From NCBI RefSeq assembly GCF_006345805.1, contig NC_043024.1:6014001-6078000 (forward strand): a stretch of 64,000 nt of DNA, in the 5' to 3' direction. The translations under genes were made by a program, and so were the position numbers. Below are positions 4,503 through 61,000 of the stretch, piece by piece; position 1 is the first letter of the stretch, and the number at the start of each line of letters is the position of its first letter. The stretch comes from Octopus sinensis. Taxonomy: Eukaryota. The notes beneath the pieces were generated by a model. The model did not search any database. It was not told where the DNA came from and was given only the letters and a program-made list of their open reading frames with translations.

Positions 4503-5035
4503 TCAATCAACCAAATATGAACCATTTTGTTGCACAATGTGTCTCCATCTTTCCTTTAACTTGAAATTACCCTCTTCCCTGAATTGAGGTGATTTCATGG
4601 CAAAGAATTCATCAAGATATCTTTTTACGTCATCCAAGGAATTGAAATTTTTACCATTAAGACTATTCTGCAGAGACCTGAATAAGTGGAAATCCGAAGG
4701 AGCAATATCTGGTGAATATGGAGGGTGGGGTATCACATCCCAGCCGAGCTGCAGCAATTTTTGTCTGGTTCCCAAAGAAACGTGCGGTCTTGCATTATCA
4801 TGTTGGGAAGAAAAAACACACCCTTCCTGTTGGCCAATTCTGGACGTTTCTCTTGAATTGCTGCTTTTAACTCGTCCAGTTGCGTGCAGTATTTCTCAGA
4901 ATTAATTATCAGGTTACTTGGGAGAAGTCCATAGTACAGAATTCCTTTCCAATCCCACCAGACTCAACCATGTTCTGAAATAAGTCGAAAGGTAAGCTAC
5001 TATAAATCGGCACGAACTTTCCGAACAACCCAATA
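4503..5035 (-). mobile_element. Internally deleted mariner transposon (one TIR plus C-terminal transposase)
   Basis: ORF 4503-4775 LGWDVIPHPPYSPDIAPSDFHLFRSL; upstream frame WWDWKGILYYGLLP..HDNARPH; mariner-type TIR tattgggttgttcggaaagttcgtgcc ending near 5035. Confidence 0.9.
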
Positions 5036-9373: not shown

Positions 9374-9419
9374 TGTATGTATGTATGTATGTATAAACGC
9401 ACGTTCAATACGTGACCGC

Positions 9420-9601
9420 GTGTGTATCGTTGGCGATATATTCCCTCCCTCTTCCCTTCTTTGGATCTTTCCTTTTCCTATGTTTCTGACGAAGAGCTCC
9501 GCTCGAAACGTTAAATCCTCCTTCTTTCGTTCCTTTCCTGAGCATCCAATAATACTATACTTGTTCCACGTCCACGCGTTGTTGTGTTTTTCTCTTTGTG
9601 T
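9420..9601 (+). mobile_element. Short Penelope-like element carrying an HHR motif, cut off by the assembly gap
   Basis: Homologous to 2012-2216 (reverse strand). Confidence 0.6.
9482..9516 (+). ncRNA. Minimal type I hammerhead motif with intact core
   Basis: GTTT-CTGACGA(9486-9492)-A-GAGC-TCC-GCTC-GAAAC(9505-9509)-GTT-AAAT; palindromic AACGTT replaces helix III. Confidence 0.65.
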
Positions 9602-9701
9602 NNNNNNNNNNNNNNNNNNNNNNNNNNNNNNNNNNNNNNNNNNNNNNNNNNNNNNNNNNNNNNNNNNNNNNNNNNNNNNNNNNNNNNNNNNNNNNNNNNN
9701 N
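9602..9701. other. Assembly gap (100 N)
   Basis: Run of N. Confidence 1.
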
Positions 9702-9956
9702 GTATGTGTGAGTGTGTATATGTGTGTGTGTATGTGTGTGTGTATATACTGTCTTGAGTTAATCTCGTTTCTATTTATGTGTATACGTATGTGTATATGT
9801 GTGCGTGTAACTATATTTCTGTGTGTGTGTACAGCTTAGTGTGTGCGCTTGTGCATGAGTAAAAGTGTGTATATGTGTATGCATGTACGTACACATGTGT
9901 GTGTGTGTGTGCAATGGTATGCGCACAAGCTTGTATTTACATTTGCATATACGTGA

Positions 9957-35400: not shown

Positions 35401-35490
35401 TAGGTATTTCTCCTGCAGCTGTCTTACCAGGAATATAGCATCAGTAGTACTTTTCCCTGGCACGAACCCAAACTGCATATCATCTAAGGT
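32478..35490 (-). mobile_element. 5'-truncated RTE-clade LINE: RT and C-terminal region plus tandemly amplified 3' region and (GAT)n tail
   Basis: QFGFVPGKSTTDAIF, AFVDLEKAFDRVP, GVHQGSVLSP, LLYADD and RRLRWYGHV motifs over 34051-35487 with frameshifts. Confidence 0.92.
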
Positions 35491-35937
35491 AATATATATA
35501 TATACACTCACTCATACACATATATATATGTGTATGTATGTGTGTGTGTATATATATATGTGTGTGTGTATATATATATGTGTGTGTACATATATACACT
35601 CACTCATACTCATACACATATATGTGTATGTATGTATGTGTGTATATATATATATATATAAATAAGACTATTCTATTGTAATTTGCAATGTGTGTGAATG
35701 ACATAGATTTTTGAAATAATAAGAACCTTTCAGCAGTACAGTTGAGAAAGTAGTTAAAAAATGTAAGTCAATGTTAATGAATGAAACATAGAGAAAACAT
35801 AGTATTACTTCATATAGGTTGTTTAATGATTCTATAATATTTCGGGTAAGATTTCACTTTTCAAATATAATAAAGAAAATAACCAAAAAACTCAGAGAAA
35901 TGTTTTGCAATTGGCAGGCCACCAAGTAACAGCACAT

Positions 35938-40163: not shown

Positions 40164-40340
40164 ATGTTATCTACGTTGTTATCAGTGTTCGCTAATATGT
40201 TCTCAGTGATTGGGGGTCAGGTACCCGAGAGGAGTTTTGTTGCTGTCAAACCCGACGGAGTACAAAGAGCCCTTTGCGGCCCAATTCTTCAGCGATTCGA
40301 AAAGAAAGGATTCAAATTAGTAGCCTGTAAATTTATCTAC
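40164..40340 (+). CDS. Nucleoside diphosphate kinase (NME3-like), coding exon 1, aa 1-59
   Basis: [37 protein letters not shown]; donor TAC|GTAAGT, phase 0. Confidence 0.95.
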
Positions 40341-40588
40341 GTAAGTAAGATGCTCGAGTCATTTAATTTAATTTAATTTATTATTATTTCTGTTGTTGTT
40401 GTTGGTATTGTTATTAATTGTTGAGATTGATAAGTTTCTTTTTCCATGTCCCACTGGGAGATGTTCTAAAAGCCGGTTTCTTCTTTTCACTCAAGGACAA
40501 AGCTTTATATACATCACTCCATCTTTTCCCTAACTTATGGACTTTTAGACGACTTATGCGCCTATATATATATGTGTGTGTGTATGAG

Positions 40589-40599
<11 letters not shown>

Positions 40600-40629
<30 letters not shown>

Positions 40630-41290
40630 ATGAGTATATGTGTGTGTGTGTGTGTATGAGTATATGTGTGTGTGTGTGTGTGTGTATGAGTATATATATG
40701 TGTGTGTGTGTATGAGTATATATATGTGTGTGTGTATGAGTATATATATGTGTGTGTGTGTGTGTGTATGAATATATATATATGTGTGTGTGTATGAATA
40801 TATGTGTGTGTATGAATATATGTGTGTGTGTGTATGAATATATGTGTGTGTGTGTGTGTGTGTGTATGAATATATGTGTGTGTGTGTGTGTGTATATGAA
40901 TATATATGTGTGTGTGTGTGTATATGAATATATATGTGTGTGTGTGTGTGTGTGTATATGAATATATATGTGTGTGTGTGTGTGTATATGAATATATATG
41001 TGTGTGTGTATATGAATATATATGTGTGTGTGTGTGTATGAATATATATATACGTGTGTGTGTATGAATATGTGTGTGTGTGTATGAATATATGTGTGTG
41101 TGTGTATGAATATATGTGTGTGTGTGTATATGAATATATATGTGTGTGTGTGTGTGTATATGAATATATGTGTGTGTATATGAATATATATGTGTGTGTG
41201 TGTGTGTATATGAATATATATGTGTGTGTGTATATGAATATATATGTGTGTGTGTATGAATATATATATATATGTGTGTGTGTGAATATA
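40600..41290. repeat. Compound minisatellite (TG)n-TATGA(G/A)TA-(TA)n in intron 1
   Basis: Roughly 25-30 variable-length units. Confidence 0.9.
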
Positions 41291-41712
41291 AGTGGGTATA
41301 TAGGTGTGTATATATGGGTATGTATGGAGGTGTATATTGTGTATATACCGTATTCATTCGTGTAGAAGTCGAACTGTTTTATACTTGATTACTTAAGAAT
41401 AACTGAAAAGAAAAAAAAATCCCTGGGGTACCACGGATACCCAAGGCAAAGGTCGACACTATCCGACTCGTGTGAATGTTTCGAAACTCTTCTCCCCATT
41501 CCTCCCCTCCCCACCAAAAAAGAAAAAAAAATTGTTTTTCTCAAAGGATTCTGATATAATCGAAACCTACACCATCTGAAGTGTATTTGTGGAAAATTTC
41601 GTAGATAAATATCCATTTTTCTGTAAGTTATGAGGCAACAAAGTCAGATGAGGCGGGGAGGGGGTCACACTTGTAAAGGTATGCCTATATACATACATAT
41701 ATATACATATAC

Positions 41713-41744
<32 letters not shown>

Positions 41745-42776
41745 ATATATACCCTTAATTTAGTGGTCTTAAAGGTGATACGTGCAAGGTGTCTTAGTTA
41801 ATGCTGGAGTCGGCTAAAGAGTATAAATGGATAATTTTACTCCTTGTAAAATATTTTTAATGTAAAAAAAAATTCTTTAAGATAATCTTAAAATTAAATA
41901 TCTTCTTTGACATTAATTCATAGTATAAAATATTTGTCGAGCTTTTGGAATAATCTATATAGGCCAGTTTCTTAAATTATAAGGAGGATATATGATTTTT
42001 ACCCTTACCAAAATGTAACAATTTATTCGGTCCATTAAATCCTAATTTCGTTAAATTGGGGTGGGTGGGTATTACATTCTGTGTATTTGTGTGTACGTAC
42101 ATACATAATAATACATACGTACGTACGTACATATCGTAAGAGCTTGTATAGGTCGCGTCAGATACGTTTTCGCCAAAACAATTCCGCATTTTGTACATTT
42201 TCGTGTCACCTTAACACCTTTGTATGATATCTATAACATTGAGGTAACAGGAAACTCGAAGTAAAATAATTTTAGAGTAAGAGATATTAATGACGACGGA
42301 GGTTTCCCAGCAGAGAAAATGTACCACCAAATATGATTGATATTAATCAAATTAATATCAATTTTTTTACCTTTATTTAAATTTATATATATACTCTTTT
42401 ATTTGTTTGTTATTTGACTGCGACCATGTTGGGGCACTGCCTTTAGTTGAGCAAATCGACCCCGGGACTTATTCTTTGTAAGCCTAGTACTTATTCTATC
42501 GGTCTCTTTTGCCGAACCGCTAAGTTACGGGGACGTAAACACACCAGCATCGGTTGTCAAGCGATGTTAGGGGACAAACACAGGCACACAAACATATACA
42601 CACATATACATACATATATATATATACACATACAGTTATACGACGGGCTTCTTTCAGTTTCCGTCTACCAAATCCACTCACAAGGCTTTGGTCGGCCCAA
42701 GGCTATAGTAGAAGACACTTGCCCAGAACCATGCTACTGGTAAGCAAGCTACTTACCACACAGCCACTCGTGCGCC

Positions 42777-42825
<49 letters not shown>

Positions 42826-42848
42826 GCATACATATATATATATACATA

Positions 42849-43381
42849 CAGGGTGGGCCAAAATTAGTGCACCAACTTTATGTGTCCCAATTATATATGT
42901 CTGTTAGTTCTACAGTTTCTTGATGTCATTGATTATTCGACCTGTTGAATTCTGTGAGAGAATGCTGCCAGAAGCCAGAGATTCCAGATTTTTCGATCGA
43001 CTCATTTTCTCCGATGAAGCAACCATCCATTATTTCCGTTCACATCAATGGCTATAACTGCTTCTATTATTCAGAAAATGACCCTAAAATGGTTTGGGAA
43101 AAGCATGTCAACTCACCTTTTTTTGTCATTTGGGTGGTGATATTATCTTCAGGAATTTGTGCATTCCATATTCAACAAGAGACGATGAATGGTGATCGTT
43201 ACCTGGTGTTGTGTGAGAACATCATCTGGCAGTATTTTCGAAACCATCATTTCAAAATCTTTGTGCAAGATGGAACATCTCCTTATTATGACAAATGTGT
43301 AAGAAACTTCCTTGATCGACACCTACGAAATTGTTGGATTTTCAAAGACTCAAGTTGGGACACTAATTTTGGCTCACCCTG
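42849..43381 (+). mobile_element. Tc1/mariner-superfamily deletion derivative with both TIRs
   Basis: 30-bp TIRs CAGGGTGGGCCAAAATTAGTGCACCAACTT / CAGGGTGAGCCAAAATTAGTGTCCCAACTT, TA flanks; FSDEA and FVQDG catalytic remnants. Confidence 0.88.
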
Positions 43382-44380
43382 TATACGCGGAGTGGTTGGC
43401 GTTAGGAAGGGCATCCAGCTGTAGAAACACTGCCAGATCAGACTGGAGCCTGGTGCAGCCCCTGGCTTCCCAGACCCCGGTCGAACCGTTCAACCCATGC
43501 TAGCACAGAAAACGGATGTTAAACGATGATGATGATGATATGTGAAAAATTAAAAGGTTTATCTCAAGCCAAGAACTTGGTTTTCTGGATTCTGTGGCAT
43601 ATGCATTGCACTCAGGGCCGGTTTTAAACCAATTAGACAGACTTGTTGAAATTGGGCCCCACACACACGCATGAGCAGAGGATGTTATGATGCATTTTTA
43701 GTATGTCATTGTGGTTGACAGTGGAACCCCAAGCCCTCAACACTTTTTTGGTTGGGACTGGAATACTACACGAAGCATAAAACATCAGTCTTCAGCTTTT
43801 GCAGAGTAGAAGGACCCCACTGACGATTCTCTAACTGAGCCCTACTCTTTCTAGTGCTGGCCTTGATTGCACCTACCCCACTGGACGCAACTGGTCTGTC
43901 GCAGCTAAGTGGATGGGAGGAACATGAAATGATGAAGTGTTTTGCTCAAGAAAATAATGCATCATGAATGCAACACCCTAACCACTAAGCTACACACACA
44001 CACAGACACACACACACACAGAGGATACCCTTAGTTCTTTAAAGTTCAATTTTTCTCAACTGATGGAATAAACCAATCAATGAATGAACGTATAATGACT
44101 CTCAGAAATGGCTGTCAGTTGAATTTACTACAATAAAGAAATATGTAATGGCCATTATTTATACCTTGTCATATTGCTTCCCAACCATACGACTGCATGG
44201 CACCTTGGGCAAATGTCTTTTGCTATAGCCCAAAGCTCTGCAAGTGGATTTGGTAGATGGAAACTGGGAGAAGCCTGTCGTACATGTGTGTGTGTGTGTT
44301 TGTCTGTCCCCCACTACTGCGTGACAACCGGTGTTGGTGTATTTACACACCGTCATAACTTAGTAGTTTGGCAAAAGCAT

Positions 44381-44535
44381 CCAGGAGTGGCTATGTGGTA
44401 AGTAGATTGCTTATGAACCACATGCTTCCGGGTTCAGTCCCACTGCGTGGCACCTTGGGCAAGTGTCTTCTACTGTAGCCTCAGGCAGACCAAAGCCTTG
44501 TGAGTGGATTTGGTAGAAGGAAACTGAAAGAAGCC

Positions 44536-44586
<51 letters not shown>

Positions 44587-44812
44587 TATATGTATGTGTG
44601 TATACATTTGTGTGTCTGTGTTTATACTCCAACATTGCTTGACAACCGATGCTGGTGTGTTTACGTCCCCGTAACTTAGCGGTTCAGCAAAAGAGACTGA
44701 TAGAATAAGTACTAGGCTTACAAAGAATAAGTCCTGGGGGTGATTTGCTCAACTAAAGGCAGTGCTCCAGCATGGCCACAGTCAAATGACTGAAACAAGT
44801 AAAAGAGTAAAG
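44381..44812 (+). mobile_element. SINE family B copy in intron 1
   Basis: Homologous to 1556-1972; opposite-strand copies at 42395-42775 and 46400-46775. Confidence 0.85.
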
Positions 44813-45611
44813 AGATAGAATAAGTACTGTGGTTGATATATTTGACTAAAAATTCTTCAAAGTGATGCCCCAGTATGACCGCAGTCTAATGACCGAAACA
44901 AGTAAAAGATGAAAGGTATATATATATGATATGTATTACAAGGTCACAGAGTATAGAAGAAAAACACAAAGAACAGAGAATTCTTTGATCTGTTCAGTGC
45001 ATTTCAGATAGATTGGCTCTTCAAAATTATACAATGCAGTGATTGTGCATATTAATTAATTCTGTATTTGGTTAAGTAAGATTCTACAGAGAGAGAGAAA
45101 TTTGACACCTTCCTATCTTTATCAAAGCTATACCCCACTGCTTAGAATAGATGATACGTTAAGGGGAGACAGATGGTAGTAAAACTAACAGTATTTAACT
45201 AGTACAAACTGCAAGGGAGCTATTTCAGCAGACCTATTTAGGAATGGTATTTATAAAATCGTATTGGAATTGCAATTCAATCTCACCCATCAACTTCAAT
45301 GTCTATGGCAAAGTTCCTACCCCATTTAAACTGTTGCTGACCAATTTGAATAGACAGAGGCTATTCAGCAGGTAATTATTTTGGTCACAATGGGAATGTC
45401 GTTCTATACTTTGTGACCTTGTACTAAAATTATTCAGTGTTTGAACTTTGGATTTACAAATTGGACAGACAGTGGAAAGTAATTTTGTAGCTGACATGGA
45501 TCACAGTGGCTTTCACTGGACAGTTTAGTTAGCCAAGTTTGATCCCTACAAAGTGCTTATAAAGTATTTACTTGGGTTTTTAATTTCCTTTTTCCATGTG
45601 TGTGTGTATGT

Positions 45612-45736
45612 CAGTGTTTCTCAACCTTTTTACTCTTGTGTAACCCTTAAAATAGATTAGATGGCTCAAGGAACCCCTGCACAAAAAAGTTATATACCAT
45701 ATCTTTCTCATATTTTTTTCATTGTAGTTCACATGG

Positions 45737-45768
<32 letters not shown>

Positions 45769-46371
45769 ATGGTTGTTATAATTTTTGATAACATTATAGG
45801 TTAGATAGGATGATATCTATATAACAATATTCGTTTCTACTCTAGGCACAAGGCCTGAATTTTTTGGGGAGGGGCCCAGTCGATAAGATCAACTCCTGTA
45901 CGCAACTGGTACTTAATTTATTGACCCCGAAAGGATGAAAGGCAAAGTCTACCTCGGCAGAATTTGAACTCAGAATGTAAAGATAGATGAAATACCTATT
46001 TCTTTACTACCCACAAGGGGCTAAACACAGAGGGGAGAAACATGGACAAATGGATTAAGTCGATTGCATCGACCCCAGTGCGTAACTGGTACTTAATATA
46101 TCGACCCCGAAAGGATGAAAGGCAAAGACGACCTTGGCGGAATTTGAACTCAGAACATAAAGATAGATGAAATAGGGCTACACATTTCGCCTGGCGTACT
46201 TACGATTCACCAACTTGCCATCTATATTACAATAACCAGTAGTATGTTGTGCATGTGTAATAATATTACAATCATGAAATTAGCATTAGCTTATCTCACT
46301 CTTTTCGGGGAACCCCTAGGAAACTTTTGCAGGACCCTAGGGTTCCGGGGAACACTAGTTGAGAAGCGCTG
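45612..46371. mobile_element. hAT-type MITE with nested SINE A copies
   Basis: TIRs CAGTGTTTCTCAAC / GTTGAGAAGCGCTG; no clear TSD. Confidence 0.6.
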
Positions 46372-46569
46372 CTCTATATCATCATTCTTTAATGTATCTT
46401 TTACTCCTTTCAGTCATTTGACTATGGCCATGCTGGAGCACCGGCTTTAGTTGAGGAAATCGACCCCAGGACTTATCGGTATCTTTTGCCACACCGCTAA
46501 GTTATGGGGATGTAAACACACCAGCATCAGCTGTCAAGCGAGGTTGGGGGGGGACAAACACAGACATAC

Positions 46570-46614
<45 letters not shown>

Positions 46615-47843
46615 CGACGGGCTTCTTTCAGTTTCTGTCTACCAAATCCACTCACAAGGCTTTGGTCAGCCCGAGGCTATAGTAGAAGACACTTGCCCAA
46701 GGTGCCACGCAGTGGGAATGAATCCCGGACAATGTGGTTGGTAAACAAGCTACTTACCGCACAGCCGCTCCTACGCCTCATGTACACTTACATGATGCAT
46801 CCAACAGAAACACCACCATCATACAAATGACATTGCTCATTTGCAATCTTCTGCAAAAACATGTCCAACCACTGTGCGGTTTATGGTTGAAGGACCATGA
46901 TACAAGGGGGGAAATACCATTGGATTGCCCCATGCAGTCCACTGGTATGGCAAACAACCAGTCTGTAGTAGTTAAGTAGATGATAATAATCTTTGCTACT
47001 AGAATCACAAGGCCTCAAATTTGGGAAAGGGATTAAGTTGATTACATAGACCCCAGTGCGTGACTGGTACTTATTTAATTGACCCTGAAAGGATGAAAGG
47101 CAACGTCCACCTCGGCAGAACTTGAACTCAGAATGTGAAGACAGATGAAATACTGCAAAGCATGTTGCTCTACATGCTAACAATTCTTATTTCTTTACTG
47201 CCCACAAGGGGCTACACAGACAAGGGGCTACTTACACATGCTAACAATCCTGCCATCTTGCCTCCCTCCAAGCAGATGATAATGATGATGATGATTATGA
47301 TTGCTTGTTTAGTTATGTCAGCATTATTGATTGTGGCAGGAATCAATAGCAATGTCGTAATGCACTTATGTTTTTAATTATTGATTAGGGTCTGTATCTG
47401 TATATCATTGATTAAAGGACTGTGCGGAAGATGTGGGCATGGCTGTGTGGTAAAAAGTTTGCTTCCCAACCTTGTGTTTTCAGGTTCAGTCCCAGTGTGG
47501 CACCTTGGATGAGTGTTTCCTGCTATAGCCCCCTTGGCTGACCAAAGCCTTGTGAGTGGATTTGGCAGACAGAAACTGAAAGAAGCGAGCTGTCAGAAAC
47601 GTTAGCACGCTGGGCAAAATGCTTAGCGGTATTTCGTCTGCTGCTACATTCTGAGTTCAAATTCCGCTGAGGTCGACTTTGCTTTTCATCCTTTTGGGGT
47701 CGATTTATTAAGTACCAGTTACGCACTAGGGTCAATAAAATTGACTTAATCCATTTGTTTGTCCCCTCTGTGTGTAGCCCCTTGTGGGCAGTAAAGAAAT
47801 AAGAAACTGAAAGAAGCCTGTCTTGGGTGTGTGTGTGTGTATA

Positions 47844-49414
47844 CAGGCATACCTCACCCGGTGTCCTTAATTGGTTCCAGGAGACACGACTTAAGTGTCA
47901 GTATGTGTTAAGGTGAACAAATGTGATAGGCATGTGGATGCCTTTGAAGTAAACAAATAAATGACATCGATTCATAGTTAAAATAATTTATTTACTGTAC
48001 TTGCATTTGTCTTTGGTATACAATATTCTTTACTACATGTAATTGTTGACAACTGCTACGAGTTGCTAGAAATAGAAGCGGGGCACATCTGTGGAGGTGA
48101 TATGTCAGAACTGAATATGTTTTCGTGTGTGAGTGCATGTCATTCATCTGAGAAAGTAGTCTGCCATGAATCCTTCTCTCTGCCAGTGTGCCACGAACCT
48201 TTCAGTTTGTCTACCAAAGCCTTTCTTGTCTGTGTCCTAAGCCTTTCTGTCCGTCTCTCTGTTGACCACAGTATTTTATAACCGCTGTGGCAGCTAGAAG
48301 GACAGACATACTGCAGCAGAGATTGTGTCTAAATAGGTCAGCTCCTGTCCATTTGAACTTTACCTGACATGGCTGAGGTCGTAGGTCAAAGGGAGATGAT
48401 TTATCATTTTTTGACTGGACAGAGAAAACCTTTTTTTGCTCCTGTTGATCGTGGTTGTTTGGATGACCAAAAATCCTTAGATTTGGTTTCAGATCTAAGC
48501 TTGGAGAACGAAGTGTTAATTTTTACACACTTTCACCTTGCTTCATAATGGAGAGATAACTTCTTCACTCTTTAAATCTCATGAACCATCCTTGACTTGC
48601 CTTGAACTCTACATCTTTCTCGTCTGGATATTTTTTTCTTCAGGTCCTCAGACAAAGACAAAGCTTTCTCTTGAATAATTTCTTGACTAATAGTAGCACA
48701 CTGACACTTCAACCTAACAATCCAAAGAGAAAGAAGATTTTCCATTTCTTCAAAGATTTTGCCTCTTTCTTTATTGATGACAGTGTTCTTCATCTGTGGG
48801 GGTTTCAGATTTGATAAAATCTTGTCGTTATTATGTAGTCATTGATACAGTTGTTGGACTAATCCCCAAAGGCCATGCAATTGTACCACTTTTTCACCTT
48901 TTCCATAACACTTTATCATAACCAGTTTATCTTCAAGCATTATAGCATGACGCTTAGCACTTTCACTATGAATATTCATAGGAACCGATAAACAGACATA
49001 ACCAAATCTGAATTCAAAACAGTCGCAGAAATCACGAGTAACAATGACACCTAACAGTAGATATTGGAACTGCAGTGCAATATGAGCTCTGAAAGACCGA
49101 TAAATAAGACAACACAACTGATTTCATGATTTTGCTCACTAAGCTACATTACTTTATGGTGTGTATCTTAACATTTACTGTACATATTTTAATATGATTT
49201 TATATGCTTTTATTCTTATTTATTGTACAGTAACCTGATTTGATGTGCTTTTAATGGTTTTCTAGTGATTTTATGATACCAATATTTGTGGCATACAGAT
49301 ATAGTCGAGTAAAATGACTCAACTTGATTTTAATTTTTCCATATATTATTTTTGAAAATTGACCTATTATTGAGAATGACTTAAATCAAAATGACTTAAG
49401 CCAAAGTATACCTG
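47844..49414 (-). mobile_element. Tigger/pogo transposon remnant
   Basis: Psq-type HTH KRHAIMLEDKLVMIKCYGKGEK and CENP-B-type MENLLSLWI..ISQEIIQEKALSL; CAGG(C/T)ATAC termini flanked by TA. Confidence 0.75.
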
Positions 49415-50098
49415 TATATATATATATGTGCAAAGTTTAGTTTAGTTAAAATATGTTTGTGTCATATTTTAACTGCGCAAATTCACTGCAGTTACCATGG
49501 AGATAAATTCTCTCTTATGGTAAAAAAGTGTAAAAACACCATGATTTATACATATAGGAAATAAAGGTTTTGTTCAGAGATCCCAAGTTGTCCTGAGCAT
49601 TGCAGATGGCCATTGGGGCCATACTTTTGTGGTCCCAACAGATTCTTTGATTGATTTTTCCAGTATTCAAATTCACAACCTTAGAATCACTAGCAAAATA
49701 CACTAACCACCAAGCCATGCATCTTCCTCAGTTGTTAGATGACACACAAATCAAACACTAATATTTGTTTTCCCTGTTTACATTGAATGTTGGATGGATG
49801 AAGGCCACATAATGTTTGTCCGAGATAGAGGGAGGGTTGAAAAAAGTAAGATTTATGTTTGCTGGGCCTCAAAAATGTGATGGTATGAGATCTAGTAGAG
49901 TGACAATACACTGCACAGTCGACTTGTCCAATATTTGCTAGCAAGTTGATTTTTAATTAGGTAACAAGTCTGTTTGGTGATGTAATTAGGCAACAGATTG
50001 TTGATAATTGATTATCTGCCAAACTGAGTTTCATGCAGTAAAATCACATTTAACTGCATGAGAATCAATTGTTACTTTATAATGTTGACATATTTTAA

Positions 50099-50562
50099 CC
50101 CTTTCGTTACCGTATTTCTTTTGAGATGCTCTGTGTTTCCTTCAAATAATTTTAAATACAACAAAGAATAACTTGCTTATCATTAAGCTAGTGTTAGGAA
50201 CATAAATTGTGACTAAGGTTTGGTGGAAGATTTTAATTCAGAACTTATGAAAACAAGACATTTGTACTACAGAGCCAGAGGCAGTTTCAGGTAGGTTGGT
50301 ATCAAAAGGGTTAAGAATTGTTTCTCTATTATATATTTTAACCCTTTTGATACCATATTTCTGTTGAGATGCTCTGTGTTTCTTTCAATTACTTTAAATA
50401 TAACAAAGAATTTAATAAAATAACCTAGTTATCATGAAGCTAGTGTTAGGAACATAAATTGCGACTAAGGTTTGGTGGAAGATTTTAATTCAAAACTGTT
50501 GAAAACAAGACATTTGTACTAAAGAGCCAGAGATGGTTTCAGCTGTGTTGGCATCAAAAAGG
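50099..50562. mobile_element. Two adjacent piggyBac-type MITEs (50099-50310, 50342-50562)
   Basis: Each flanked by TTAA; same family as 19937 but opposite orientation. Confidence 0.8.
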
Positions 50563-50996
50563 TTAATGTAGGGAGTATTAAAAAGTTAACTACAGTTACG
50601 TTAGTGTTAACAGATTTAATGTTGAGAGTATTAAAAAAAATCTTTGAACAATTTTTTTATACAATACCTAATGACATTTAATTATAAAAATATAATGGGA
50701 TCTTTTTAAACATGACAAGTTATGGGGATCCAGTAGAGCAAAATAAGGATCAAAGGGGTCCATAGGCGAAAAATGGCTGAGAACCACTGGTATAAACAAA
50801 GCCAGCAGGTTGGTTTAGGCTCAAAGGTCCAGGTGCTTCTGATAAGGCACAAAATGTTGAAACACCAGTGTTTCAGAATCTTCTTCGCTATTGAGTGTGT
50901 TGAACTCCCTATCATCATAAAAGAGAAAAGTTTTTCTCCTTTCACACACACTACAATGACTAGCATACTTTGTGTCTGAACCTTTCTAGACATGCT

Positions 50997-51214
50997 GAGG
51001 GGTGGGGAGCTGAAAAGTTCCTGGCTTTGGGTAACAGAAAATACAGGAGGATCACTTAATTATGATTTTATGCAACATATTCCCCTCTCAGATTCACACA
51101 CCTATTGTAATGGTCCTTCAGTTATTCTAAGTCCTGTTAAAGAACTTGGAAGGTTGGGCCCCCAACCAGGTCTTTCATGATACCCCTAAAGCCAGGAACT
51201 TTCCAGGACCCCTC
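50997..51214. mobile_element. Mariner-type MITE, uninterrupted reference copy
   Basis: TIRs gaggggt..ctg(a/g)aaagttcctggcttt; reverse homologue of 59656-60389. Confidence 0.75.
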
Positions 51215-52045
51215 ATATTAAGAGTAAATATGCAAATAGTATTAAAAAGTTTAATTGGAAATAGTTATGTGGTGAGGCATGAAATTGCATGGCCTAGTGC
51301 GTAGGCTATTGGACTCATGATCGCTAGATCGTGGGTTCAGTCCCCAGACCAGGCGTTGTGTTGTGTTTTTGACGAAAACCTTTCATTTCACATTGCTCCA
51401 GCCCCTCTTTTGATTGGTGGGGAATGTCGGCCTGCTTACCCAGCCAGTGGGATGGTGTCATTTTAAGGCTAAAATGATGCAAAGTGCATTGTGACCAGCG
51501 ATGTGTAACAGCATCTGATAGTCTGGTTGATCACATGATCATGTGATGTGGTGAGACAGACAGTTAAGTTAGTATTAACATAATGAGTGGACATCAGAGA
51601 TAGGTGGCACCAACAAGTTGGAACTTCTCCGTTTTTAAGGGGATATTTCAGATTTTTTTTTTTCACAGTGCTCTTGGAAATACTCTTTTTAGCCAAAAAA
51701 ATTGTGAAAATTTACCATCTGAAAATGTTTACTTTTTTTTTTTCCTTTTTTTCTTGACAAAAAAGGCTTCTCAACCAAAATCAGTCTGGAGAGGGGAAGA
51801 TGATAGGGGTGGGGTTAAAAGAAACTATTTTTTAGAAAAAAATTTTTTTGTTAAAAAGATGCTCCAGATCATTTACAAAGGCACCGTGAAAAAAAAAAAA
51901 GAAACTTGAAAACTGTCAAAACAGAAATTCCAACCTGTTGGTGCTAACCATTTCCAACATCCACCATTTCAAGTAAGGAGTATTAAAATGTTAATTAGAA
52001 ATACTTAAGACAAGGAGATAATTAAGTTAGTGTTGATATATTTAA

Positions 52046-52265
52046 CCCTTTGGTATTCAAATTATTTCATTGAAAGTAATGCTTATGTATTCACGTTGCT
52101 TTGAATTAATCATGGATTATCTCTTGGCTTTGAGATTTTGATGAGGTAACTGTTAATTATTAGAATGTTATTGTAGAGTAGGTATGAGGGGCTGGATTTG
52201 GCCCGTTTGAACATAAAACAGGTGGAATATTTGGGTTGGACATGGCTGGCTTAAATGCTAAAGGG
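52046..52265. mobile_element. piggyBac-type MITE, second subfamily
   Basis: TTAA flanks; reverse homologue at 58775-58995. Confidence 0.7.
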
Positions 52266-52446
52266 TTAATGTAGGAAATATCAAAAAGGGGAGATGAGAC
52301 TAAGGGACATAGTAAAGTTAGTGTTAACTCACTTTAGGGAGTTATTTTGTGAAACACCACACCATATTTTTTTGATCAATTTCGAAATTTTTTGAAGCAA
52401 CTTGTGCAATGTTATTCATTTGAAGAAGGGTTCCATAAGGGTTTAA

Positions 52447-52666
52447 CCCTTTCATTACCAACCTGGCTGAAACCGCCTCTGGCTCTGAATACAAATGTCT
52501 TGTTTTCATAAGTTTTGAATTAAAATCTTCCATCAAACCTTAGTCACAGTTTATGTTCCTAACATTAGCTTAATGATAACTAAGTTATTTTACTAAATTC
52601 TTTGTTATATTTAAAGTAATTGAAAGAAACACAGAACATCTCAAAATAAATACAGTAACAAAAGGG
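52447..52666. mobile_element. piggyBac-type MITE ending 57 nt before exon 2
   Basis: TTAA|CCCT start, AGGG end; homologous to 19937. Confidence 0.8.
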
Positions 52667-52723
52667 TTTAATATGAAATGAAATTCTTTTCTTAATTGTG
52701 TATTTCTTATTTCTCCTTTGCAG

Positions 52724-52825
52724 CCAACCAAGGAACTTTTAGAAGCCCATTATGCTGAACATAAAGGGAAAAGTTTCTTTGATAAGCTTGTGGCATATAT
52801 GTCATCTGGACCCGTCTTTGCCATG
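52724..52825 (+). CDS. NDPK coding exon 2, aa 60-93 (102 nt)
   Basis: Acceptor ttctcctttgcag; [34 protein letters not shown]; donor ATG|GTGAGT. Confidence 0.96.
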
Positions 52826-53254
52826 GTGAGTACATATTGGAATCGGTCAATGTTTTCCATGTTTTTTTTCTTTATTTTGTCTTTAGATCCATTGATAGGA
52901 GAAAGGAGATGGCCAATATGCTGTACATACAGAGCTTTGTCTTCTGGGAGATAAGATCAGTGGGTCTTCTTGAAGACCCTAACAAAAAGTATCAATGGCT
53001 TTGATAGATCCCTGAGAACACTTGAGAATATCAGATGGTACCATCACGTTTCCAACAAAGAACTGCATGCCCATATCAGCTTGCAGTCTCCCACCCCATA
53101 GCTATCCATTGCATGCGCTGCTAAAAACATGTACTCCATATCCCACTAGATCATCCTATGAGTTGCAGGTTGGAAGGGGTCCTGTACCAGGCCCTATGCC
53201 AGATGGCTGAATGGGATTAAGGAAGATCACCAGAGGCTCAACGTTACCTTGGAG

Positions 53255-53455
53255 CAGTGGTTTTCAACCAGGGTTCCGCCAGTACAGTCCAGGGGTTCTG
53301 CAAGAAGTTACAAAACTGCTAAATTTGGCAGTAATTTTTTATTCTCCTGTGCAGATACGTGTGCATAAGACTATTAAATTATTGCACAGGGGTTCCTCGA
53401 GCCAGTGGAATGTTTCCTTGGGGTTCTGCTCCAGCAAAAGGTTTGAAAAGCACTG
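53255..53455. mobile_element. hAT-type MITE with intact 8-bp TSD
   Basis: TIRs CAGTGGTTTTCAA / TTGAAAAGCACTG; CCTTGGAG at 53247-53254 and 53456-53463. Confidence 0.88.
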
Positions 53456-53754
53456 CCTTGGAGGATGCGCAGGGGCTGGCACAGGACTGCCAGCAATGGC
53501 AGGCACCGGTAGACTTGGTTGTCTCTTTGCATGATGATGTCTCTGGGACCACAAACCTGAGATGACCCCAGCCCCATCAAACAAGAGTAGGTAAACCTAC
53601 ATATTCCTAGTCACTGTGTGTGTGTGTGATGCTGATTCGGCTATGTTAAGGGCACATGTGTCTCTGGAATACTCAGCCACTTATGTATGAATTCAGGAGC
53701 TGGTAATTCAGATCAAACGAGTGAATCTCCATCATTGAAACTAACGGAGAATCA

Positions 53755-54012
53755 TTTGTGTGTGTGTGTCTGTGTGTGTCTGTGTGTGTGTCTCTGTGTG
53801 TGTGTGTGTCTGTGTGTGTGTGTCTGTCTCTGTGTGTGTCTGTGTGTGTGTGTATCTGTGTGTGTGTGTCTGTGTGTGTGTCTGTGTGTGTGTGTCTGTG
53901 TGTGTGTTTGTTTGTCTGTGTGTGTGTGTCTGTATGTCTGTGTGTGTGTGTTTGTTTGTTTGTTTGTCTGTACGTGTGTGTGTGCCTGCGTGTGTGTGTG
54001 TGTGTGTGTGTG
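53755..54012. repeat. Long (TG)n/(TGTC)n tract in intron 2
   Basis: Visible array ending about 45 nt before exon 3. Confidence 0.95.
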
Positions 54013-54056
54013 TTTCTTTGGGTTGCTTATTAATCATATTTTAATCCCTTGTTTAG

Positions 54057-54169
54057 GTGCTGGAGGGGGAAGGTGTTGTACAGATGTGCCGTCAAATGAT
54101 TGGTGCCACCAAACCACAGGAGTCGATGCTTCGTACCATCCGAGGAGACTATGCTATTGAAATGGGGAG
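54057..54169 (+). CDS. NDPK coding exon 3, aa 94-131 (113 nt)
   Basis: Acceptor ttgtttag; [37 protein letters not shown](R); donor AG|GTATGG, phase 2. Confidence 0.96.
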
Positions 54170-55967
54170 GTATGGCTCACTTATTCTTACTATTTCTTGC
54201 TTTAAATGTTTCTTTTACTGGTTTCAGTCATTAGACTGCAGCCATACTGGAGCACAACCACGAAAAGATTTAGCCAAATGAATCAACCCCAGTACTCTTT
54301 TTTTATTTTTTATATATAAACCTGCTACTTATATCAATCTCCTTTACTGAATTGCTAAGTTACAGGGATGTAAACAAACCAACACCAGTTGTCAAGCAGT
54401 AATGGAAGTGAAATACACACACACACACACATACATTTATGACAAGCTTTTTTTTTCGGTTTCTGTCTACCACACTCGCTGCCAAAGCTTTGGTTGGCCC
54501 AAGACTACCATAGAAGACACTTACTCAAGGTGCCATACAGTGGGACTGAACCCGAAACCATGTGGTTGGGCAGCAAGCTTCTTAGCACACAGCAACACTT
54601 GTGCCTTGTGTACCTTTAATAAAGTGTTCCCTGATGATCCATTGTGGTCGAGTATTTGGAACACTCTGTGTGTATGTTTGTCTCCCATCATTACTTGATA
54701 ACCGGTGTTGGTGTGTTTACATCCTGGTAACTTAGCAGTTCAGCAACAGAGACCAATAAAATAAGTACCAGGCTTTAAAAAGAAACTAAGTGCTGGCGTC
54801 GATTCATTTGACTAAAATCTCTTCGAGGTGGTGCCCCAGCATGGCCGTCGTACAAGATAAGATATATATGTAGGTGCATGCATGGCTGTATGGTGGAAAA
54901 GTTCATTTCCCACCAACATGGTTTCAAGTTCCACCACATGGCACCATGGACAAGTGTCTTTAAGAGTGAATCTGGTTGATGAGAACTGTACAGAAGTCCA
55001 TTTGTGTGTGTGTATTGGTGTTGGTTTGTTTATGTCCCTTTAACTTGGCAGTTCAGTGAGGAAAAGACTGACAGAATAACTATCAGACATGCAAAATAAG
55101 CATTGGGGTACACCGAGTGAGTTGTATTATAGCTGGAAGCTTAGTGGTTAAGGTGGTTCATTCAGGATCATAAAATTGTGGTTTCAATTCCTGGTCCAGG
55201 TAATGCATTTTGTGTGTGTGTGTGAAGGCACATGGCTTAGTGGTTAAAGTGTCGGGCTCACAATCATGAGGTAATGAGTTTGGTTCTCGGCCTGGGCTGC
55301 ATGTTGTGTTCTTCAGCAAGACACTTTATTTCACATTGCTCCAGTCCAGTCAGTTGTAGAAATGACTTGTGACAAGAGAAGCAAGTAAAAGGGAGAAAAA
55401 AAATGTGTAGACACACCCACACACACATCATCATTTAATGTCCATCTTCCATGCTAGCATGGGTTAGATGTTTTGCACAGAGCTAGTAAGGCTAGGGACC
55501 ATGCCAGGCCCCATTGTCTGTTTTGGCATGGTTTCTATAGCAGGATATTTTTCCTAATGCCAACCACTCCACAGAGTGTACTGGGAGCTTTTTATATGGC
55601 ACCAGTGCTTTTTATGTGGCATCCGCACTGGTACCAATTCTGCTGTGGTTGGCAAGTGTTCTTCAGCACACATACCTTTACACATTTGCTATGGACACAT
55701 GGACGGATAGAACACTATTTTATGGCATTATGTGGAGTTTGGGTCTGGCTTGGAACAGATCACTCCTGTTGATATGTATTTCAATTACACATGTAAGAAA
55801 TAACTTGGTTAACAAACAGGGCTTTTGAACAGAATATGCTCATATACAGTGACACCACTCTGTTTGTGTATGTTTGTGAGAGTGTCTATTTATTTTTTAT
55901 TGTAACAGAGTACTGATTCTCATAACTGTCTTGGTTCACTAATTGTATTTCTTGATCATCATTTCAG

Positions 55968-56085
55968 AAATATTGTTCATGGCAGTGACTCTGTGACATC
56001 AGCCAACCATGAAATAAGTCTTTGGTTTTCTTCTGATGAACTCATCTCTTGGGAATCGGCAACGGAACACTTGCGATACGAATGA
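55968..56085 (+). CDS. NDPK coding exon 4, aa 131-169 plus stop (118 nt), with catalytic His
   Basis: Acceptor catttcag; (R)NIVHGSDSVTSANHEISLWFSSDELISWESATEHLRYE*; frame continuous across all four exons, 510 nt total. Confidence 0.96.
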
Positions 56086-58995: not shown

Positions 58996-59993
58996 TTAAA
59001 CCACATTTTGATCTGAAAATATTTTCAAGTTTCTTTTCCCTTTCTTTTTTTTTCTTTTAATATATATATATATATATATATATTACCGAAAAGGCATCTC
59101 CCATCGTTTCTAAGTGCGTAGTGCCAAAGAAATTGGCCAAAATTGGTCTGGATGGAGGAGGAGTGAAAAATAAAATCATGAATTTTCCAAAAATTTTATT
59201 CATAAAAAGTCTCTCGTAATTTTCCAAGGCTGTGGTGAGAAAAAAAGAAATTAAGGAAAATCCCCGTCAAAATACACTACGGTATATCTAGAATAATAAG
59301 CGCAAAAATAAACTTACATAATTATGTGAATGTGTCGGTAGAGAGAAACATATATTTGTACACATACTTAAAATCCACAATGAAAGTTTTTTTTAGCTTT
59401 AACGTCAATAATTACGGGTAGTTAGGCAAGGGACGTAACTCTTGCTATTGTTGGTCACACGCAAATTATCTCCCGTGAAAAAGTACTGCGCTTGGTTGTA
59501 ACGACAAATTACACGCCAGTGAAGGCGTGAGCACACACACACACACACTGGTTCAGTTAGTTTTCATAAGCGAGATATTAAGTATAAAGTGGGTATTTGT
59601 ACAGTATTACAAATATATGTGTATTTAAAGACATACATGCATGTGTGTATGTATACGAAGGAGTACTGAAAAATTCCTAGCTTTAAGGGTGTCACGTAAG
59701 GCCTGGTTGGAGGCTCAACCTTCCCAGTTGTTTTACTGAGCTTAGAAAAACTGAAGGACTGCTGCAATGAGTGTGTGAATCTGAGAGGGGAATATGTCGA
59801 ATAAAATGATAACTAATTGTTCTTCAATGTGAGGTATATCTGCCATCTCAATATGGCTAACCACTAAGGGTGGGTGTTACTGTAGCTTGTAGCCCCAGGA
59901 GAACATCTCCTCCAGCTGGCTTTAGGCACACTTTCTGTGCCCTATCGGTATTTGCAAAGGGAGGTCACCCTTCTCTCGTCAACCTAAGTGATA

Positions 59994-60038
59994 TGCACGG
60001 ACTGCAGTTTCTGGGTATTGACCCGTCATCAGCGTACG
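59994..60038 (-). ncRNA. Minimal type I hammerhead, left-arm copy
   Basis: Reverse complement of 60076-60120 with one substitution in stem I. Confidence 0.7.
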
Positions 60039-60075
60039 ACAATCACTGGTTTTCGATGAAAGGAGTCCCAATTGT

Positions 60076-60120
60076 CGTACGCTGATGACGGGTCAATACC
60101 CAGAAACTGCAGTCCGTGCG
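60076..60120 (+). ncRNA. Minimal type I hammerhead, right-arm copy
   Basis: CGTACG-CTGATGA(60082-88)-C-GGGT-CAAT-ACCC-A-GAAAC(60103-07)-TGCA-GTC^-CGTGCG. Confidence 0.75.
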
Positions 60121-61000
60121 TATCACTTAGGTTGACGAGAGAAGGGTGACCTCCCTTTGCAAATACCGATAGGGCACAGAAAGTGTGCCTAAAGCCAGCT
60201 GGAGGAGATGTTCTCCTGGGGCTACAAGCTACAGTAACACCCACCCTTAGTGGATAACCATATTGAGATGGCAGATATACCTCACATTTACGTGCAGTTA
60301 CTGTTTATACCTCGTTCAGAGATTTATTATTAATTGTTCTTCCTGTATTTTCTTTTACGCCAAGCCAGGAACTTTCCAGCGCCTTCTCGCGCGCGCGCGT
60401 GGAAAACGCTTACTGAAACAGATTCGTAAGCCAACAAAATATTCTTTGGGAATCAACGACGGTTATCTATCCTGATCGAACAATCTAGAATATTCCAGAA
60501 CATTCTAGGCGAACATGGTTAGTTACCCCTTCGCTAATTTACCAGAGGCATAAACTCATGATCAATACGCAGGTGATCACTAGTGGCACATCGCCTATTT
60601 AAGCGTGAACACCCATTCGAACAACCTCTCTTCTCTAACTGCTTCTACGAGACGCGACAAGGTCCACCGCGACCACGAGAGAGCCAGGCACATGAATTCG
60701 ATATCTAATTTCCTACCAGTAGCTCGCCATGGTATTCTACGTCTAGTGCCCGTGAAAAGTAGATCTCGTAGCTTCATTTACTTCTACTTACTCAAAGTTA
60801 TCACGGAACATGACAAGTTGTTCAAACCCTTTCTTCTTCCCAGAAATCTTTATTGAACAGTGGATACTCGCGTGTCTGAATAAAACATTGAACGTGAAGT
60901 TATTCGCATAGAAGTATTTCATGGTTACTTGATTAATGATTCAGTCCAATTATTAAAGTGTTCACGTTTTTATCAGCGACCTAAATATTTAGCGACTCGC

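What the first reader, a model, noticed from the sequence alone, without database searches (positions are those of the whole stretch)
59814..60342. Recent palindromic insertion carrying two back-to-back hammerhead ribozymes, with a 12-bp TSD
Seen: 218-bp arms differ at only 3 positions around a 27-nt loop. A 42-nt tail ends in TTATTAT. TAATTGTTCTTC is duplicated on both sides, and the uninterrupted host MITE at 50997-51214 has that site once. Each arm reads stem I, CTGATGA, short stem II, GAAAC, palindromic TGCA, GTC, stem I. Established: this minimal type I HHR with a palindromic loop in place of helix III is the Penelope-like element type, which cleaves as a dimer, and Penelope elements often carry an inverted partial pLTR. 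Inference: a young non-autonomous Penelope derivative (retrozyme-like). Either strand yields a long hairpin in which the ribozyme is masked by its own antisense arm. Caveat: the 10.1-11.1 position is a C-A mismatch.
Basis: partly seen in the sequence, partly recalled or inferred. Interest (0 to 1): 0.88.

Follow-up and report, generated by a model that had tools for sequence, protein, structure and literature searches.

The report
Old Penelope-type palindromic insertion with hammerhead relics
This is a 505-bp head-to-head pair of Penelope-like retroelement end fragments in an octopus genome, each carrying a slightly off-consensus hammerhead ribozyme motif; it is a real insertion of a known kind, and it is old rather than recent.

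Summary
The window is Octopus sinensis. The same insertion sits at the same site in an independent O. vulgaris assembly. O. bimaculoides has the orthologous empty site with one copy of the 12-mer. So it is a genuine insertion, not an assembly artefact.

It is not young. It predates the O. sinensis/O. vulgaris split, and the O. vulgaris arms are only 90% alike. The 98.6% arm identity in O. sinensis most likely reflects arm-to-arm gene conversion.

Head-to-head 5'-truncated copies, a tail on one end only and a TSD together form the published signature of Penelope-like element (PLE) insertions.

Each arm carries a type I hammerhead motif with a complete core, a 6-bp helix I, a 4-bp helix II and a palindromic ACUGCAGU helix III. 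Chance expectation is about 5.5e-4 per window, and two copies are predicted to fold as a double hammerhead. Against activity, positions 10.1/11.1 are C·A, no Rfam hammerhead model matches, and the four arm copies show no detectable constraint.

I could not reach any family copy or RT/GIY-YIG partner. "Retrozyme-like" is not supported.

Verdict: a new member of a known kind, of modest interest.

The parts
59814..59825 (.). Left copy of the 12-bp target-site duplication, TAATTGTTCTTC
   Evidence: O. bimaculoides has a single copy at the empty site.
59826..60043 (-). Left arm: an inverted, 5'-truncated copy of the element's 3' region. Its sense strand is the - strand and it has no tail.
   Evidence: 218 nt, 215/218 complementary to the right arm. 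Orthologous in O. vulgaris at L002:29377-29596.
59994..60038 (-). Hammerhead-like motif of the left arm. The predicted cut on the - strand is between 60000 and 59999. Helix I has 5 bp.
   Evidence: Descriptor hit.
60044..60070 (+). 27-nt unique spacer, CACTGGTTTTCGATGAAAGGAGTCCCA. It is probably 27 further 5' nucleotides of the + strand copy.
   Evidence: 26/27 identical in O. vulgaris. The reading as extra 5' sequence is an inference.
60071..60288 (+). Right arm: the sense copy of the element's 3' region.
   Evidence: Orthologous in O. vulgaris.
60076..60120 (+). Hammerhead-like motif: helix I 6 bp, CUGAUGA, C·A at 10.1/11.1, helix II GGGU/ACCC with loop CAAU, GAAA, helix III A-U and C-G capped by UGCA, GUC with the cut after 60114.
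   Evidence: No Rfam hammerhead match.
60289..60330 (+). 42-nt tail, present on one end only.
   Evidence: 39/42 identical in O. vulgaris. It matches the 30-40 bp PLE 'tail' that lies between the two internal RT start sites (PMC11167929, PMC8557442).
60331..60342 (.). Right copy of the target-site duplication, TAATTGTTCTTC
59653..60383 (.). Host MITE, about 215 bp without the insert, interrupted by the insertion.
   Evidence: Gapless alignment of the joined flanks to the paralogue. The uninterrupted orthologue is in O. bimaculoides L003.
51006..51213 (-). Uninterrupted paralogous MITE copy (empty-site comparison).
   Evidence: 82% identity over 208 nt.

Best explanation
The insert is the product of one retrotransposition event by a Penelope-like element (PLE) reverse transcriptase/GIY-YIG endonuclease. 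The event happened in an ancestor of O. sinensis and O. vulgaris, after the O. bimaculoides lineage had split off.

Inferred mechanism:
1. The endonuclease cut both strands of an AT-rich site in a MITE, with a 12-bp stagger.
2. Each 3' end primed reverse transcription on the element's RNA at one of two internal start sites 42 nt apart. This gives a tail on one side only.
3. Both cDNAs ran back to just upstream of the hammerhead and were joined head to head. The result is arms of 218 nt and 218+27 nt.

The insert carries only the 3' (pseudo-LTR-type) region with its hammerhead motif and has no coding capacity. It has since been an inert, fixed relic. In a read-through transcript the two motifs would be locked in a 218-bp hairpin. 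In O. sinensis the arms were later homogenised by arm-to-arm gene conversion, which makes the insertion look young.

Shown: the anatomy, the empty site, the shared ancestry, the motif and its predicted folds.
Inferred: the PLE enzyme, priming on both strands, and any past ribozyme activity.
For: - Anatomy and TSD.
- Empty sites: the paralogous MITE and the O. bimaculoides orthologue.
- The same insert, with the same spacer, tail and TSD, is in an independent O. vulgaris assembly, and two arm differences are shared by both species.
- Published PLE hallmarks match. An inverted 5'-truncated copy lies next to the direct one, and a 30-40 bp tail sits at one end only (PMC8557442). A. vaga Pen2a has an inverted pLTR, a 31-bp tail and a 9-bp TSD (PMC3846280). 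The PAc enzyme cleaves and extends both strands, starts reverse transcription at two internal sites whose spacing equals the tail, and prefers AT-rich/ATT targets (PMC11167929).
- Hammerhead motif: full core, helices I and II, and a palindromic helix III. It gives 2 hits in the window against 5.5e-4 expected. Two copies cofold at -41.9 kcal/mol against 2 x -16.4 for monomers, with an intermolecular 8-bp helix III and swapped helix I.
- Gene conversion: flanks give equal lineage rates (26 against 28 changes in 1052 sites), so about 11 arm-specific changes are expected per lineage. O. sinensis has 1 and O. vulgaris has 19. Another 3-4 sites differ between the species but are identical in both arms within each.
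Against: - No reverse transcriptase or GIY-YIG coding sequence is in the insert, the window or the fetched octopus loci.
- No other copy of the family could be reached. So there is no homology link to an autonomous PLE and no test of core conservation.
- No Rfam hammerhead model matches, even at E<=10 on a 70-nt stretch.
- G10.1-C11.1, described as highly conserved in PLE hammerheads (PMC4209133), is replaced by C·A. The alternative reading is a 5' bulged C plus an extra A before G12.
- The tail is 42 nt, slightly over the quoted 30-40 nt.
- The four arm copies show no more conservation in the motif than elsewhere: 3 variable sites in 46 nt against 23 in 172 nt.
Confidence: 0.72

Rival explanations
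1. One reading: the source was a dedicated short non-autonomous RNA of about 290 nt carrying a hammerhead (retrozyme- or SINE-like), mobilised in trans by a PLE, rather than a 5'-truncated autonomous element.
For: - Both cDNA copies stop within 27 nt of each other, just upstream of helix I. This fits an RNA whose 5' end lay near 60044.
- The sense strand has no open frame beyond 16 codons from the AUG in CUGAUGA.
- Animal retrozymes are argued to derive from PLE pLTRs (bioRxiv 10.64898/2026.07.22.740005), and pLTR sequences alone suffice for trans-mobilisation in A. vaga (PMC3846280).
Against: - There is no tandem head-to-tail arrangement here.
- No family copies are available to define a unit.
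- The copies include 39 nt upstream of the predicted cleavage site, so the template was not a ribozyme-processed monomer.
- Strong 5' truncation is normal for PLEs (PMC8557442).
Confidence: 0.3
2. A non-PLE retroelement fragment (LINE or SINE) inserted by ordinary target-primed reverse transcription with a 5' inversion or snap-back. The hammerhead-like motif is a chance or degenerate resemblance.
For: - A 12-bp TSD and 5' truncation also fit LINEs.
- No Rfam hammerhead match, and 10.1/11.1 is non-canonical.
- A genome of about 2.7 Gb (size from my own knowledge) would hold some 20 chance hits to my loose descriptor (extrapolated).
Against: - Twin priming, as described for L1 from general knowledge, inverts a different and more 5' segment of the RNA. 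Here both arms are the same segment.
- The one-sided 42-nt tail is a PLE-specific signature (PMC11167929).
- There is no poly(A) or simple-repeat 3' end.
- The insert has no similarity to the RTE-type LINE in the window.
- The chance of the motif falling in this particular 260-nt piece is about 1e-6 (scaled).
Confidence: 0.12
3. A foldback or TIR DNA transposon, or a hairpin-RNA/miRNA-type gene, rather than a retroelement.
For: - Long inverted arms with a short loop.
- Weak hairpin-driven Rfam matches to mir-1662 (31 bits, gathering score 85) and MIR1512 (29 bits, gathering score 79).
Against: - The termini are asymmetric: the left end AATGTGAGG and the right end ...ATTTATTAT share no terminal inverted repeat, and the tail separates the right arm from the TSD.
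- From general knowledge, 12 bp is longer than the TSDs of known DDE superfamilies.
- The miRNA scores are far below gathering.
Confidence: 0.03
4. The palindrome is an assembly artefact.
For: Palindromes can be created or homogenised by long-read library chimeras and by polishing. The near-identity of the arms is seen in the O. sinensis assembly only.
Against: The same structure at the same site is present in an independent O. vulgaris assembly, with its own substitutions and two arm differences shared with O. sinensis.
Confidence: 0.01

Closest known systems
PLE insertions with inverted pseudo-LTRs and a one-sided tail (e.g. Pen2a_Av of Adineta vaga, PMC3846280; general description in PMC8557442; mechanism in PMC11167929)
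   Same: Head-to-head inverted copies of the element's 3' region. A short extension on only one end (42 nt here, 31 nt in Pen2a_Av, 30-40 nt in general). A short TSD. An AT-rich target. A hammerhead motif in the repeated region.
   Different: There is no ORF and no direct pLTR: this is a bare inverted pair. The TSD is 12 bp, against 8-10 bp in the rotifer examples. No sequence link to any autonomous PLE could be made with the data at hand.
Metazoan PLE hammerheads with a small palindromic helix III (Cervera and de la Pena 2014, PMC4209133)
   Same: Type I topology. CUGAUGA...GAAA...GUC core. An extra nucleotide after A9. Helix I of 6 bp and helix II of 4 bp. A 2-bp helix III capped by a 4-nt palindromic loop. 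Predicted dimeric (double-hammerhead) fold. Pairs of motifs on opposite strands 100-700 bp apart were also reported in Schistosoma.
   Different: An additional A lies between helix II and G12, so 10.1/11.1 reads C·A instead of the conserved G-C. It is not recognised by any Rfam hammerhead model.
Animal non-LTR retrozymes (PMC7229834; bioRxiv 10.64898/2026.07.22.740005)
   Same: Short non-coding units with a type I hammerhead, thought to derive from PLE pLTRs.
   Different: Retrozymes are head-to-tail tandem arrays processed into circular RNA. Here there is a single inverted pair with a TSD, and the copies retain sequence upstream of the cleavage site.
L1 5' inversions by twin priming
   Same: An inverted 5' part joined to a direct 3' part within a single TSD-flanked insertion.
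   Different: In twin priming the two parts are different segments of the RNA. Here both arms copy the same segment, and they differ only by the tail and the 27-nt spacer.
Arm-to-arm gene conversion in genomic palindromes (known for large sex-chromosome palindromes; from my own knowledge)
   Same: Arms stay nearly identical in one lineage although the structure is old, and some substitutions are fixed in both arms at once.
   Different: The scale is 0.5 kb instead of tens to hundreds of kb. The pattern is patchy: two old arm differences survive.

Membership tests
Penelope-like element (PLE) insertion | Single ORF with a telomerase-like RT and a GIY-YIG endonuclease | tested here: not met
   tblastn with the Poseidon_Ac protein (supplement of PMC11167929) finds nothing in the window or the fetched octopus loci. 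The insert has no long sense ORF. So it is not an autonomous PLE. This does not bear on whether a PLE made it.
Penelope-like element (PLE) insertion | Pseudo-LTR arrangement: 5'-truncated copy with an adjacent inverted 5'-truncated copy, head to head | tested here: met
   Arms 59826-60043 and 60071-60288 with a 27-nt spacer. Feature as defined in PMC8557442 and PMC3846280.
Penelope-like element (PLE) insertion | Optional 30-40 bp tail at one end only | tested here: met
   42 nt at 60289-60330, absent from the left arm and conserved in O. vulgaris. It is 2 nt longer than the quoted range.
Penelope-like element (PLE) insertion | Target-site duplication with a demonstrable empty site | tested here: met
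   12-bp TSD. Empty orthologous site in O. bimaculoides and in a paralogous MITE.
Penelope-like element (PLE) insertion | Sequence homology of the repeat to the pLTR/3' end of an autonomous PLE in the same genome | not testable with these tools
   Only about 110 kb of octopus DNA could be fetched. DNA scans of the viral and metagenome collections and the protein searches found no relative.
Hammerhead ribozyme, type I | Conserved core: C3 U4 G5 A6 N7 G8 A9, G12 A13 A14, A15.1-U16.1, H17 | tested here: met
   CUGAUGA 60082-60088, GAA 60103-60105, A 60106 paired with U 60113, C17 at 60114. Invariant in all four arm copies of the two species, but neutral drift alone would leave these positions unchanged with probability about 0.17.
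Hammerhead ribozyme, type I | Three helices around the core; in PLE/metazoan forms helix III is short and palindromic, which allows a dimer | tested here: met
   Helix I 6 bp, helix II 4 bp, helix III 2 bp plus UGCA. ACUGCAGU is self-complementary. The cofold of two copies gives the double hammerhead, 9 kcal/mol better than two monomers.
Hammerhead ribozyme, type I | G10.1-C11.1 pair closing helix II | tested here: not met
   C 60089 lies opposite A 60102. The alternative reading is a bulged C (typical of PLE hammerheads) with G10.1-C11.1 and an extra A before G12. A descriptor that requires this pair, with or without the 5' bulge, finds nothing.
Hammerhead ribozyme, type I | Match to a curated covariance model (Rfam hammerhead families) | tested here: not met
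   No hammerhead match at gathering score, nor at E<=10 on 751 nt or 70 nt. I could not run a positive control with a known PLE mini-hammerhead. The PLE mini-hammerheads of PMC4209133 were found with a structure-descriptor search (RNAmotif), not with covariance models.
Hammerhead ribozyme, type I | Covariation or conservation across family members; self-cleavage | not testable with these tools
   Only four copies from one event are available. The left arm in O. vulgaris has C11.2 to U (still pairs) and G2.1 to U (breaks helix I). Cleavage needs a bench test.
Animal non-LTR retrozyme | Head-to-tail tandem repeats of a unit of about 170-400 nt, each with a hammerhead | tested here: not met
   No direct or tandem copy of the unit in the window; the two copies are inverted.

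The most novel reading that the evidence does not exclude
The small retroelement palindrome is kept nearly perfect in O. sinensis by hairpin-templated (intrastrand) mismatch correction that also reaches its flanks: both 12-bp TSD copies changed C to G together. Alternatively or in addition, the C·A-containing hammerhead is a functional cephalopod-specific PLE ribozyme variant rather than a dead copy. Either would make this locus a compact natural test case, for concerted evolution of short palindromes or for tolerance at hammerhead position 10.1/11.1.
Probability: 0.15. Interest if true: 0.45.

Novelty: new member of a known kind. Interest (0 to 1): 0.3.

Why it matters
It adds a cleanly delimited cephalopod example of the PLE insertion signature: inverted pLTR pair, one-sided tail, TSD and a proven empty site. 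The geometry fits the recent in vitro finding that a PLE enzyme primes on both target strands from two internal start sites.

It is also a cautionary case for dating repeats from the identity of palindrome arms. The arms are 98.6% identical in one species and 90% in its sister species, for the same old insertion.

The hammerhead motif, with C·A at 10.1/11.1, is a cheap bench test of how much the PLE-type ribozyme tolerates at that position. None of this changes current understanding.

Tried and rejected
**Rfam**
- Searched the whole window, 751 nt and 70 nt. No hammerhead match.
- The weak mir-1662, MIR1512 and snoRNA matches were rejected as generic hairpin or low-score noise.

**Looking for family copies**
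- blastn of the unit against the window and against the fetched octopus loci: only the two arms and their orthologues.
- Exact-pattern scans of viral contigs and metagenome contigs, two patterns: nothing.

**The antisense 74/91-aa ORF in the arms as a handle on other copies**
- No word-sharing homologue and no Pfam domain.
- The full HMMER scan gave only two unrelated tandem-repeat proteins, whose scores are sums of weak repeats. I reject it as a real coding region.

**PLE partner**
- The Poseidon_Ac protein gave no tblastn hit in the window or loci.
- I ran no further search on it. The 120 hits listed would be vertebrate PLEs, and octopus copies would not be reachable.

**Other ideas tested**
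- Reading the arm as the N-terminus of a PLE ORF, as in PAc, where the ORF starts inside the hammerhead: rejected. There is a stop after 16 codons and three stops in 86 codons, as expected by chance.
- Folding of the putative RT start region 60200-60330: not better than shuffles (z = -0.6).
- A literature search on octopus PLEs or hammerheads gave nothing specific.

Full report
**Observation.** The region holds a palindromic insert exactly as described.
- The arms 59826-60043 and 60071-60288 are 218 nt long and differ at three positions (59857/60257, 59860/60254, 59994/60120).
- They enclose a 27-nt spacer (60044-60070).
- A 42-nt tail ending TTATTAT follows on the right side only (60289-60330).
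- The whole is flanked by TAATTGTTCTTC at 59814-59825 and 60331-60342.
- No other copy of the arm exists in the window, and nothing is tandem.
- With the insert and one 12-mer removed, the flanks align without a gap across the junction to a paralogous MITE at 51006-51213 (82% identity). That copy has the site once.

**Where it comes from, and whether it is real.** Exons of a nucleoside diphosphate kinase gene lie at 40227-56082. Its protein identified the source.
- The window is 100% identical to Octopus sinensis GCA_006345805.1, chromosome CM016886.1. The insert lies about 3.7 kb downstream of the stop codon.
- The orthologous locus of an independent O. vulgaris assembly (L002) carries the same insert at the same site. 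It has the same spacer (26/27), the same tail (39/42) and a 12-bp duplication.
- In O. bimaculoides (L003) the two flanks abut with a single TAATTCTTCTTC, which is a clean orthologous empty site.

So the palindrome is not an assembly artefact, and it is a true insertion with a 12-bp TSD.

**Age.** That inference fails.
- Two of the three O. sinensis arm differences (59860/60254 and 59994/60120) are shared with O. vulgaris. The insertion, and some arm divergence, therefore predate the split of the two species.
- In O. vulgaris the arms are only 90.0% identical (198/220). That is about the pairwise divergence between these species and O. bimaculoides in the flanks.
- With O. bimaculoides as outgroup, the flanks evolved at equal rates in the two lineages (26 and 28 lineage-specific changes in 1052 sites). 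About 11 arm-specific changes are therefore expected in each lineage.
- O. vulgaris shows 19 and O. sinensis shows 1 (Poisson P about 2e-4).
- A further 3-4 sites differ between the species but are the same in both arms within each species.

The simplest account is arm-to-arm gene conversion in the O. sinensis lineage. The interleaved direction of the inferred corrections, and the survival of two old differences, suggest short patches rather than one tract. Consensus or polishing effects in the O. sinensis assembly cannot be excluded without the reads.

**What it is.** The architecture matches the published signature of Penelope-like element insertions point by point.
- Strong 5' truncation, an inverted 5'-truncated copy next to the direct one, and a 30-40 bp tail at one end only (PMC8557442).
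- In Adineta vaga, an insert completed by an inverted pLTR, with a 31-bp tail on one of the inverted pLTRs and a 9-bp TSD. That paper also describes solo pLTRs and pLTR-flanked captured sequences flanked by TSDs (PMC3846280).
- The purified Anolis PLE enzyme cleaves and extends both target strands. It starts reverse transcription at two internal sites whose spacing corresponds to the tail, and it prefers AT-rich/ATT targets (PMC11167929).

Applied here (inference):
- The - strand was nicked at the left edge of the 12-mer (5'-...CAATTA^GTTAT) and the + strand at its right edge (5'-...TTCTTC^CTGTA).
- The - strand 3' end primed at the distal start site (60330), and the + strand 3' end primed at the proximal one (equivalent to 60288).
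- Both cDNAs ended within 27 nt of each other, just upstream of the hammerhead, and were joined head to head.

A TIR or foldback DNA transposon is unlikely because the ends are asymmetric. Twin priming of a LINE is unlikely because both arms copy the same RNA segment. The insert also has no similarity to the RTE-type LINE in the window.

**The hammerhead motif.** On the + strand the order is:
- helix I 5' strand 60076-60081
- CUGAUGA 60082-60088
- C 60089
- GGGU/ACCC with loop CAAU (60090-60101)
- A 60102
- GAAA 60103-60106
- C-UGCA-G 60107-60112
- UC 60113-60114
- helix I 3' strand 60115-60120

The mirror copy on the - strand occupies 59994-60038 and has a 5-bp helix I.

Evidence for the motif:
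- This is the metazoan/PLE form with a 2-bp helix III under a palindromic loop. ACUGCAGU is fully self-complementary.
- A descriptor loose enough to admit it finds only these two sites in the window. It gave 2 hits in 3617 shuffles, or 5.5e-4 per window. The motif is therefore not a chance match at the scale of this window.
- The monomer's minimum-energy fold keeps helices I and II but not III.
- Two copies cofold at -41.9 kcal/mol against -32.8 for two monomers. The cofold has an intermolecular 8-bp helix III and swapped helix I strands, which is the classical double hammerhead.

Evidence against an active ribozyme:
- Positions 10.1/11.1 are C·A. The extra C after A9 is typical of PLE hammerheads, but the extra A before G12 is not, and G10.1-C11.1 is described as highly conserved (PMC4209133).
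- A descriptor that demands this pair finds nothing.
- No Rfam hammerhead model matches, even at E<=10 on 70 nt. I could not run a positive control.
- The core is unchanged in all four arm copies of the two species. With about 12% variable columns this is expected by drift with probability about 0.17.
- The left arm in O. vulgaris has lost the innermost helix I pair.
- The copies include 39 nt upstream of the cleavage site, so the template RNA had not been cut there.
- A read-through transcript of the locus would fold into a 218-bp stem of -456.5 kcal/mol. The motifs at this locus are best seen as relics.

**What could not be done.** The tools gave me about 110 kb of it.
- DNA scans of the viral and metagenome collections were empty.
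- Searches with the arm's antisense ORF were empty or spurious.
- tblastn with a PLE protein against the window and loci was empty.

Whether the source was a dedicated short non-autonomous RNA or a truncated autonomous PLE therefore stays open. The absence of any tandem arrangement speaks against calling it retrozyme-like.

**Verdict.** This is a new member of a known kind. The most unusual aspects are secondary: the lineage-specific homogenisation of a 0.5-kb palindrome, and the simultaneous C-to-G change in both TSD copies in O. sinensis.

Noticed in passing
window 59819 and 60336; L002:29370 and 29889; L003:34676: The sixth base of the 12-bp TSD is C at the O. bimaculoides empty site and in both O. 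vulgaris copies, but G in both O. sinensis copies. Two direct repeats 517 bp apart changed together. Two independent identical transversions are very unlikely, and conversion between such short direct repeats is unusual. In O. sinensis, G59819 would pair with C60295 if the hairpin is extended into the tail, but that does not explain the right copy.
   Followed up: partly
window 9479-9519 (+), within repeat 9400-9601; second copy 2044-2228 (-): A second hammerhead-like motif of more canonical PLE mini type: helix I uauguuu, then CUGACGA, a bulged A, helix II GAGC/GCUC with loop ucc, GAAA, CG, UU, and cut site before aaauccu. It has the bulged A after A9, G10.1-C11.1 and an ACGU palindrome. It sits in a repeat of about 190 bp that abuts (TG)n/(TATG)n microsatellites. 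The other copy (86% identical) has CCGACGA, i.e. U4 changed to C. It may be another PLE-derived family. With only two copies there is no test of conservation.
   Followed up: partly
window 60275-60282 and 60306-60313; 60231-60238 with 60297-60304: The octamer TATACCTC occurs twice, 31 nt apart, shortly upstream of each of the two inferred reverse-transcription start sites (60288 and 60330). Both copies are kept in O. vulgaris. An 8-bp stem (CAGUAACA with AGUUACUG) bridges the arm end and the tail. The fold of the region is not better than shuffles.
   Followed up: partly
L002:29377-29841 compared with window 59826-60288: Of the substitutions private to the O. vulgaris arms, nine are G to A on the + strand and one is C to T, counted over both arms. 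This is a strand asymmetry (binomial P about 0.02). It assumes the O. vulgaris state is derived, and the numbers are small.
   Followed up: no
window 60032-60304 (-) and 59861-60082 (+): An open frame of 74-91 codons runs antisense to the hammerhead through each arm. It has no Pfam domain and no credible homologue among 1.8 billion representative proteins, so it is probably open by chance.
   Followed up: yes
window 40227-40349, 52718-52828, 54057-54170, 55966-56082 (+): Four coding exons of nucleoside diphosphate kinase 3, 99% identical to the Octopus protein. The palindromic insert lies about 3.7 kb downstream of the stop codon. Whether it lies in the 3' UTR is unknown.
   Followed up: partly
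window 34054-35511 (-); 4506-4895 (-); 9603-9702: An RTE-type LINE remnant with RVT_1 and a PHD-like zinc finger, broken across frames. A mariner-like transposase remnant, recognised by eye with no Pfam hit at E<=0.01. An assembly gap of 100 N. The window is very rich in (TG)n/(TA)n microsatellites and tRNA-derived SINE copies.
   Followed up: partly
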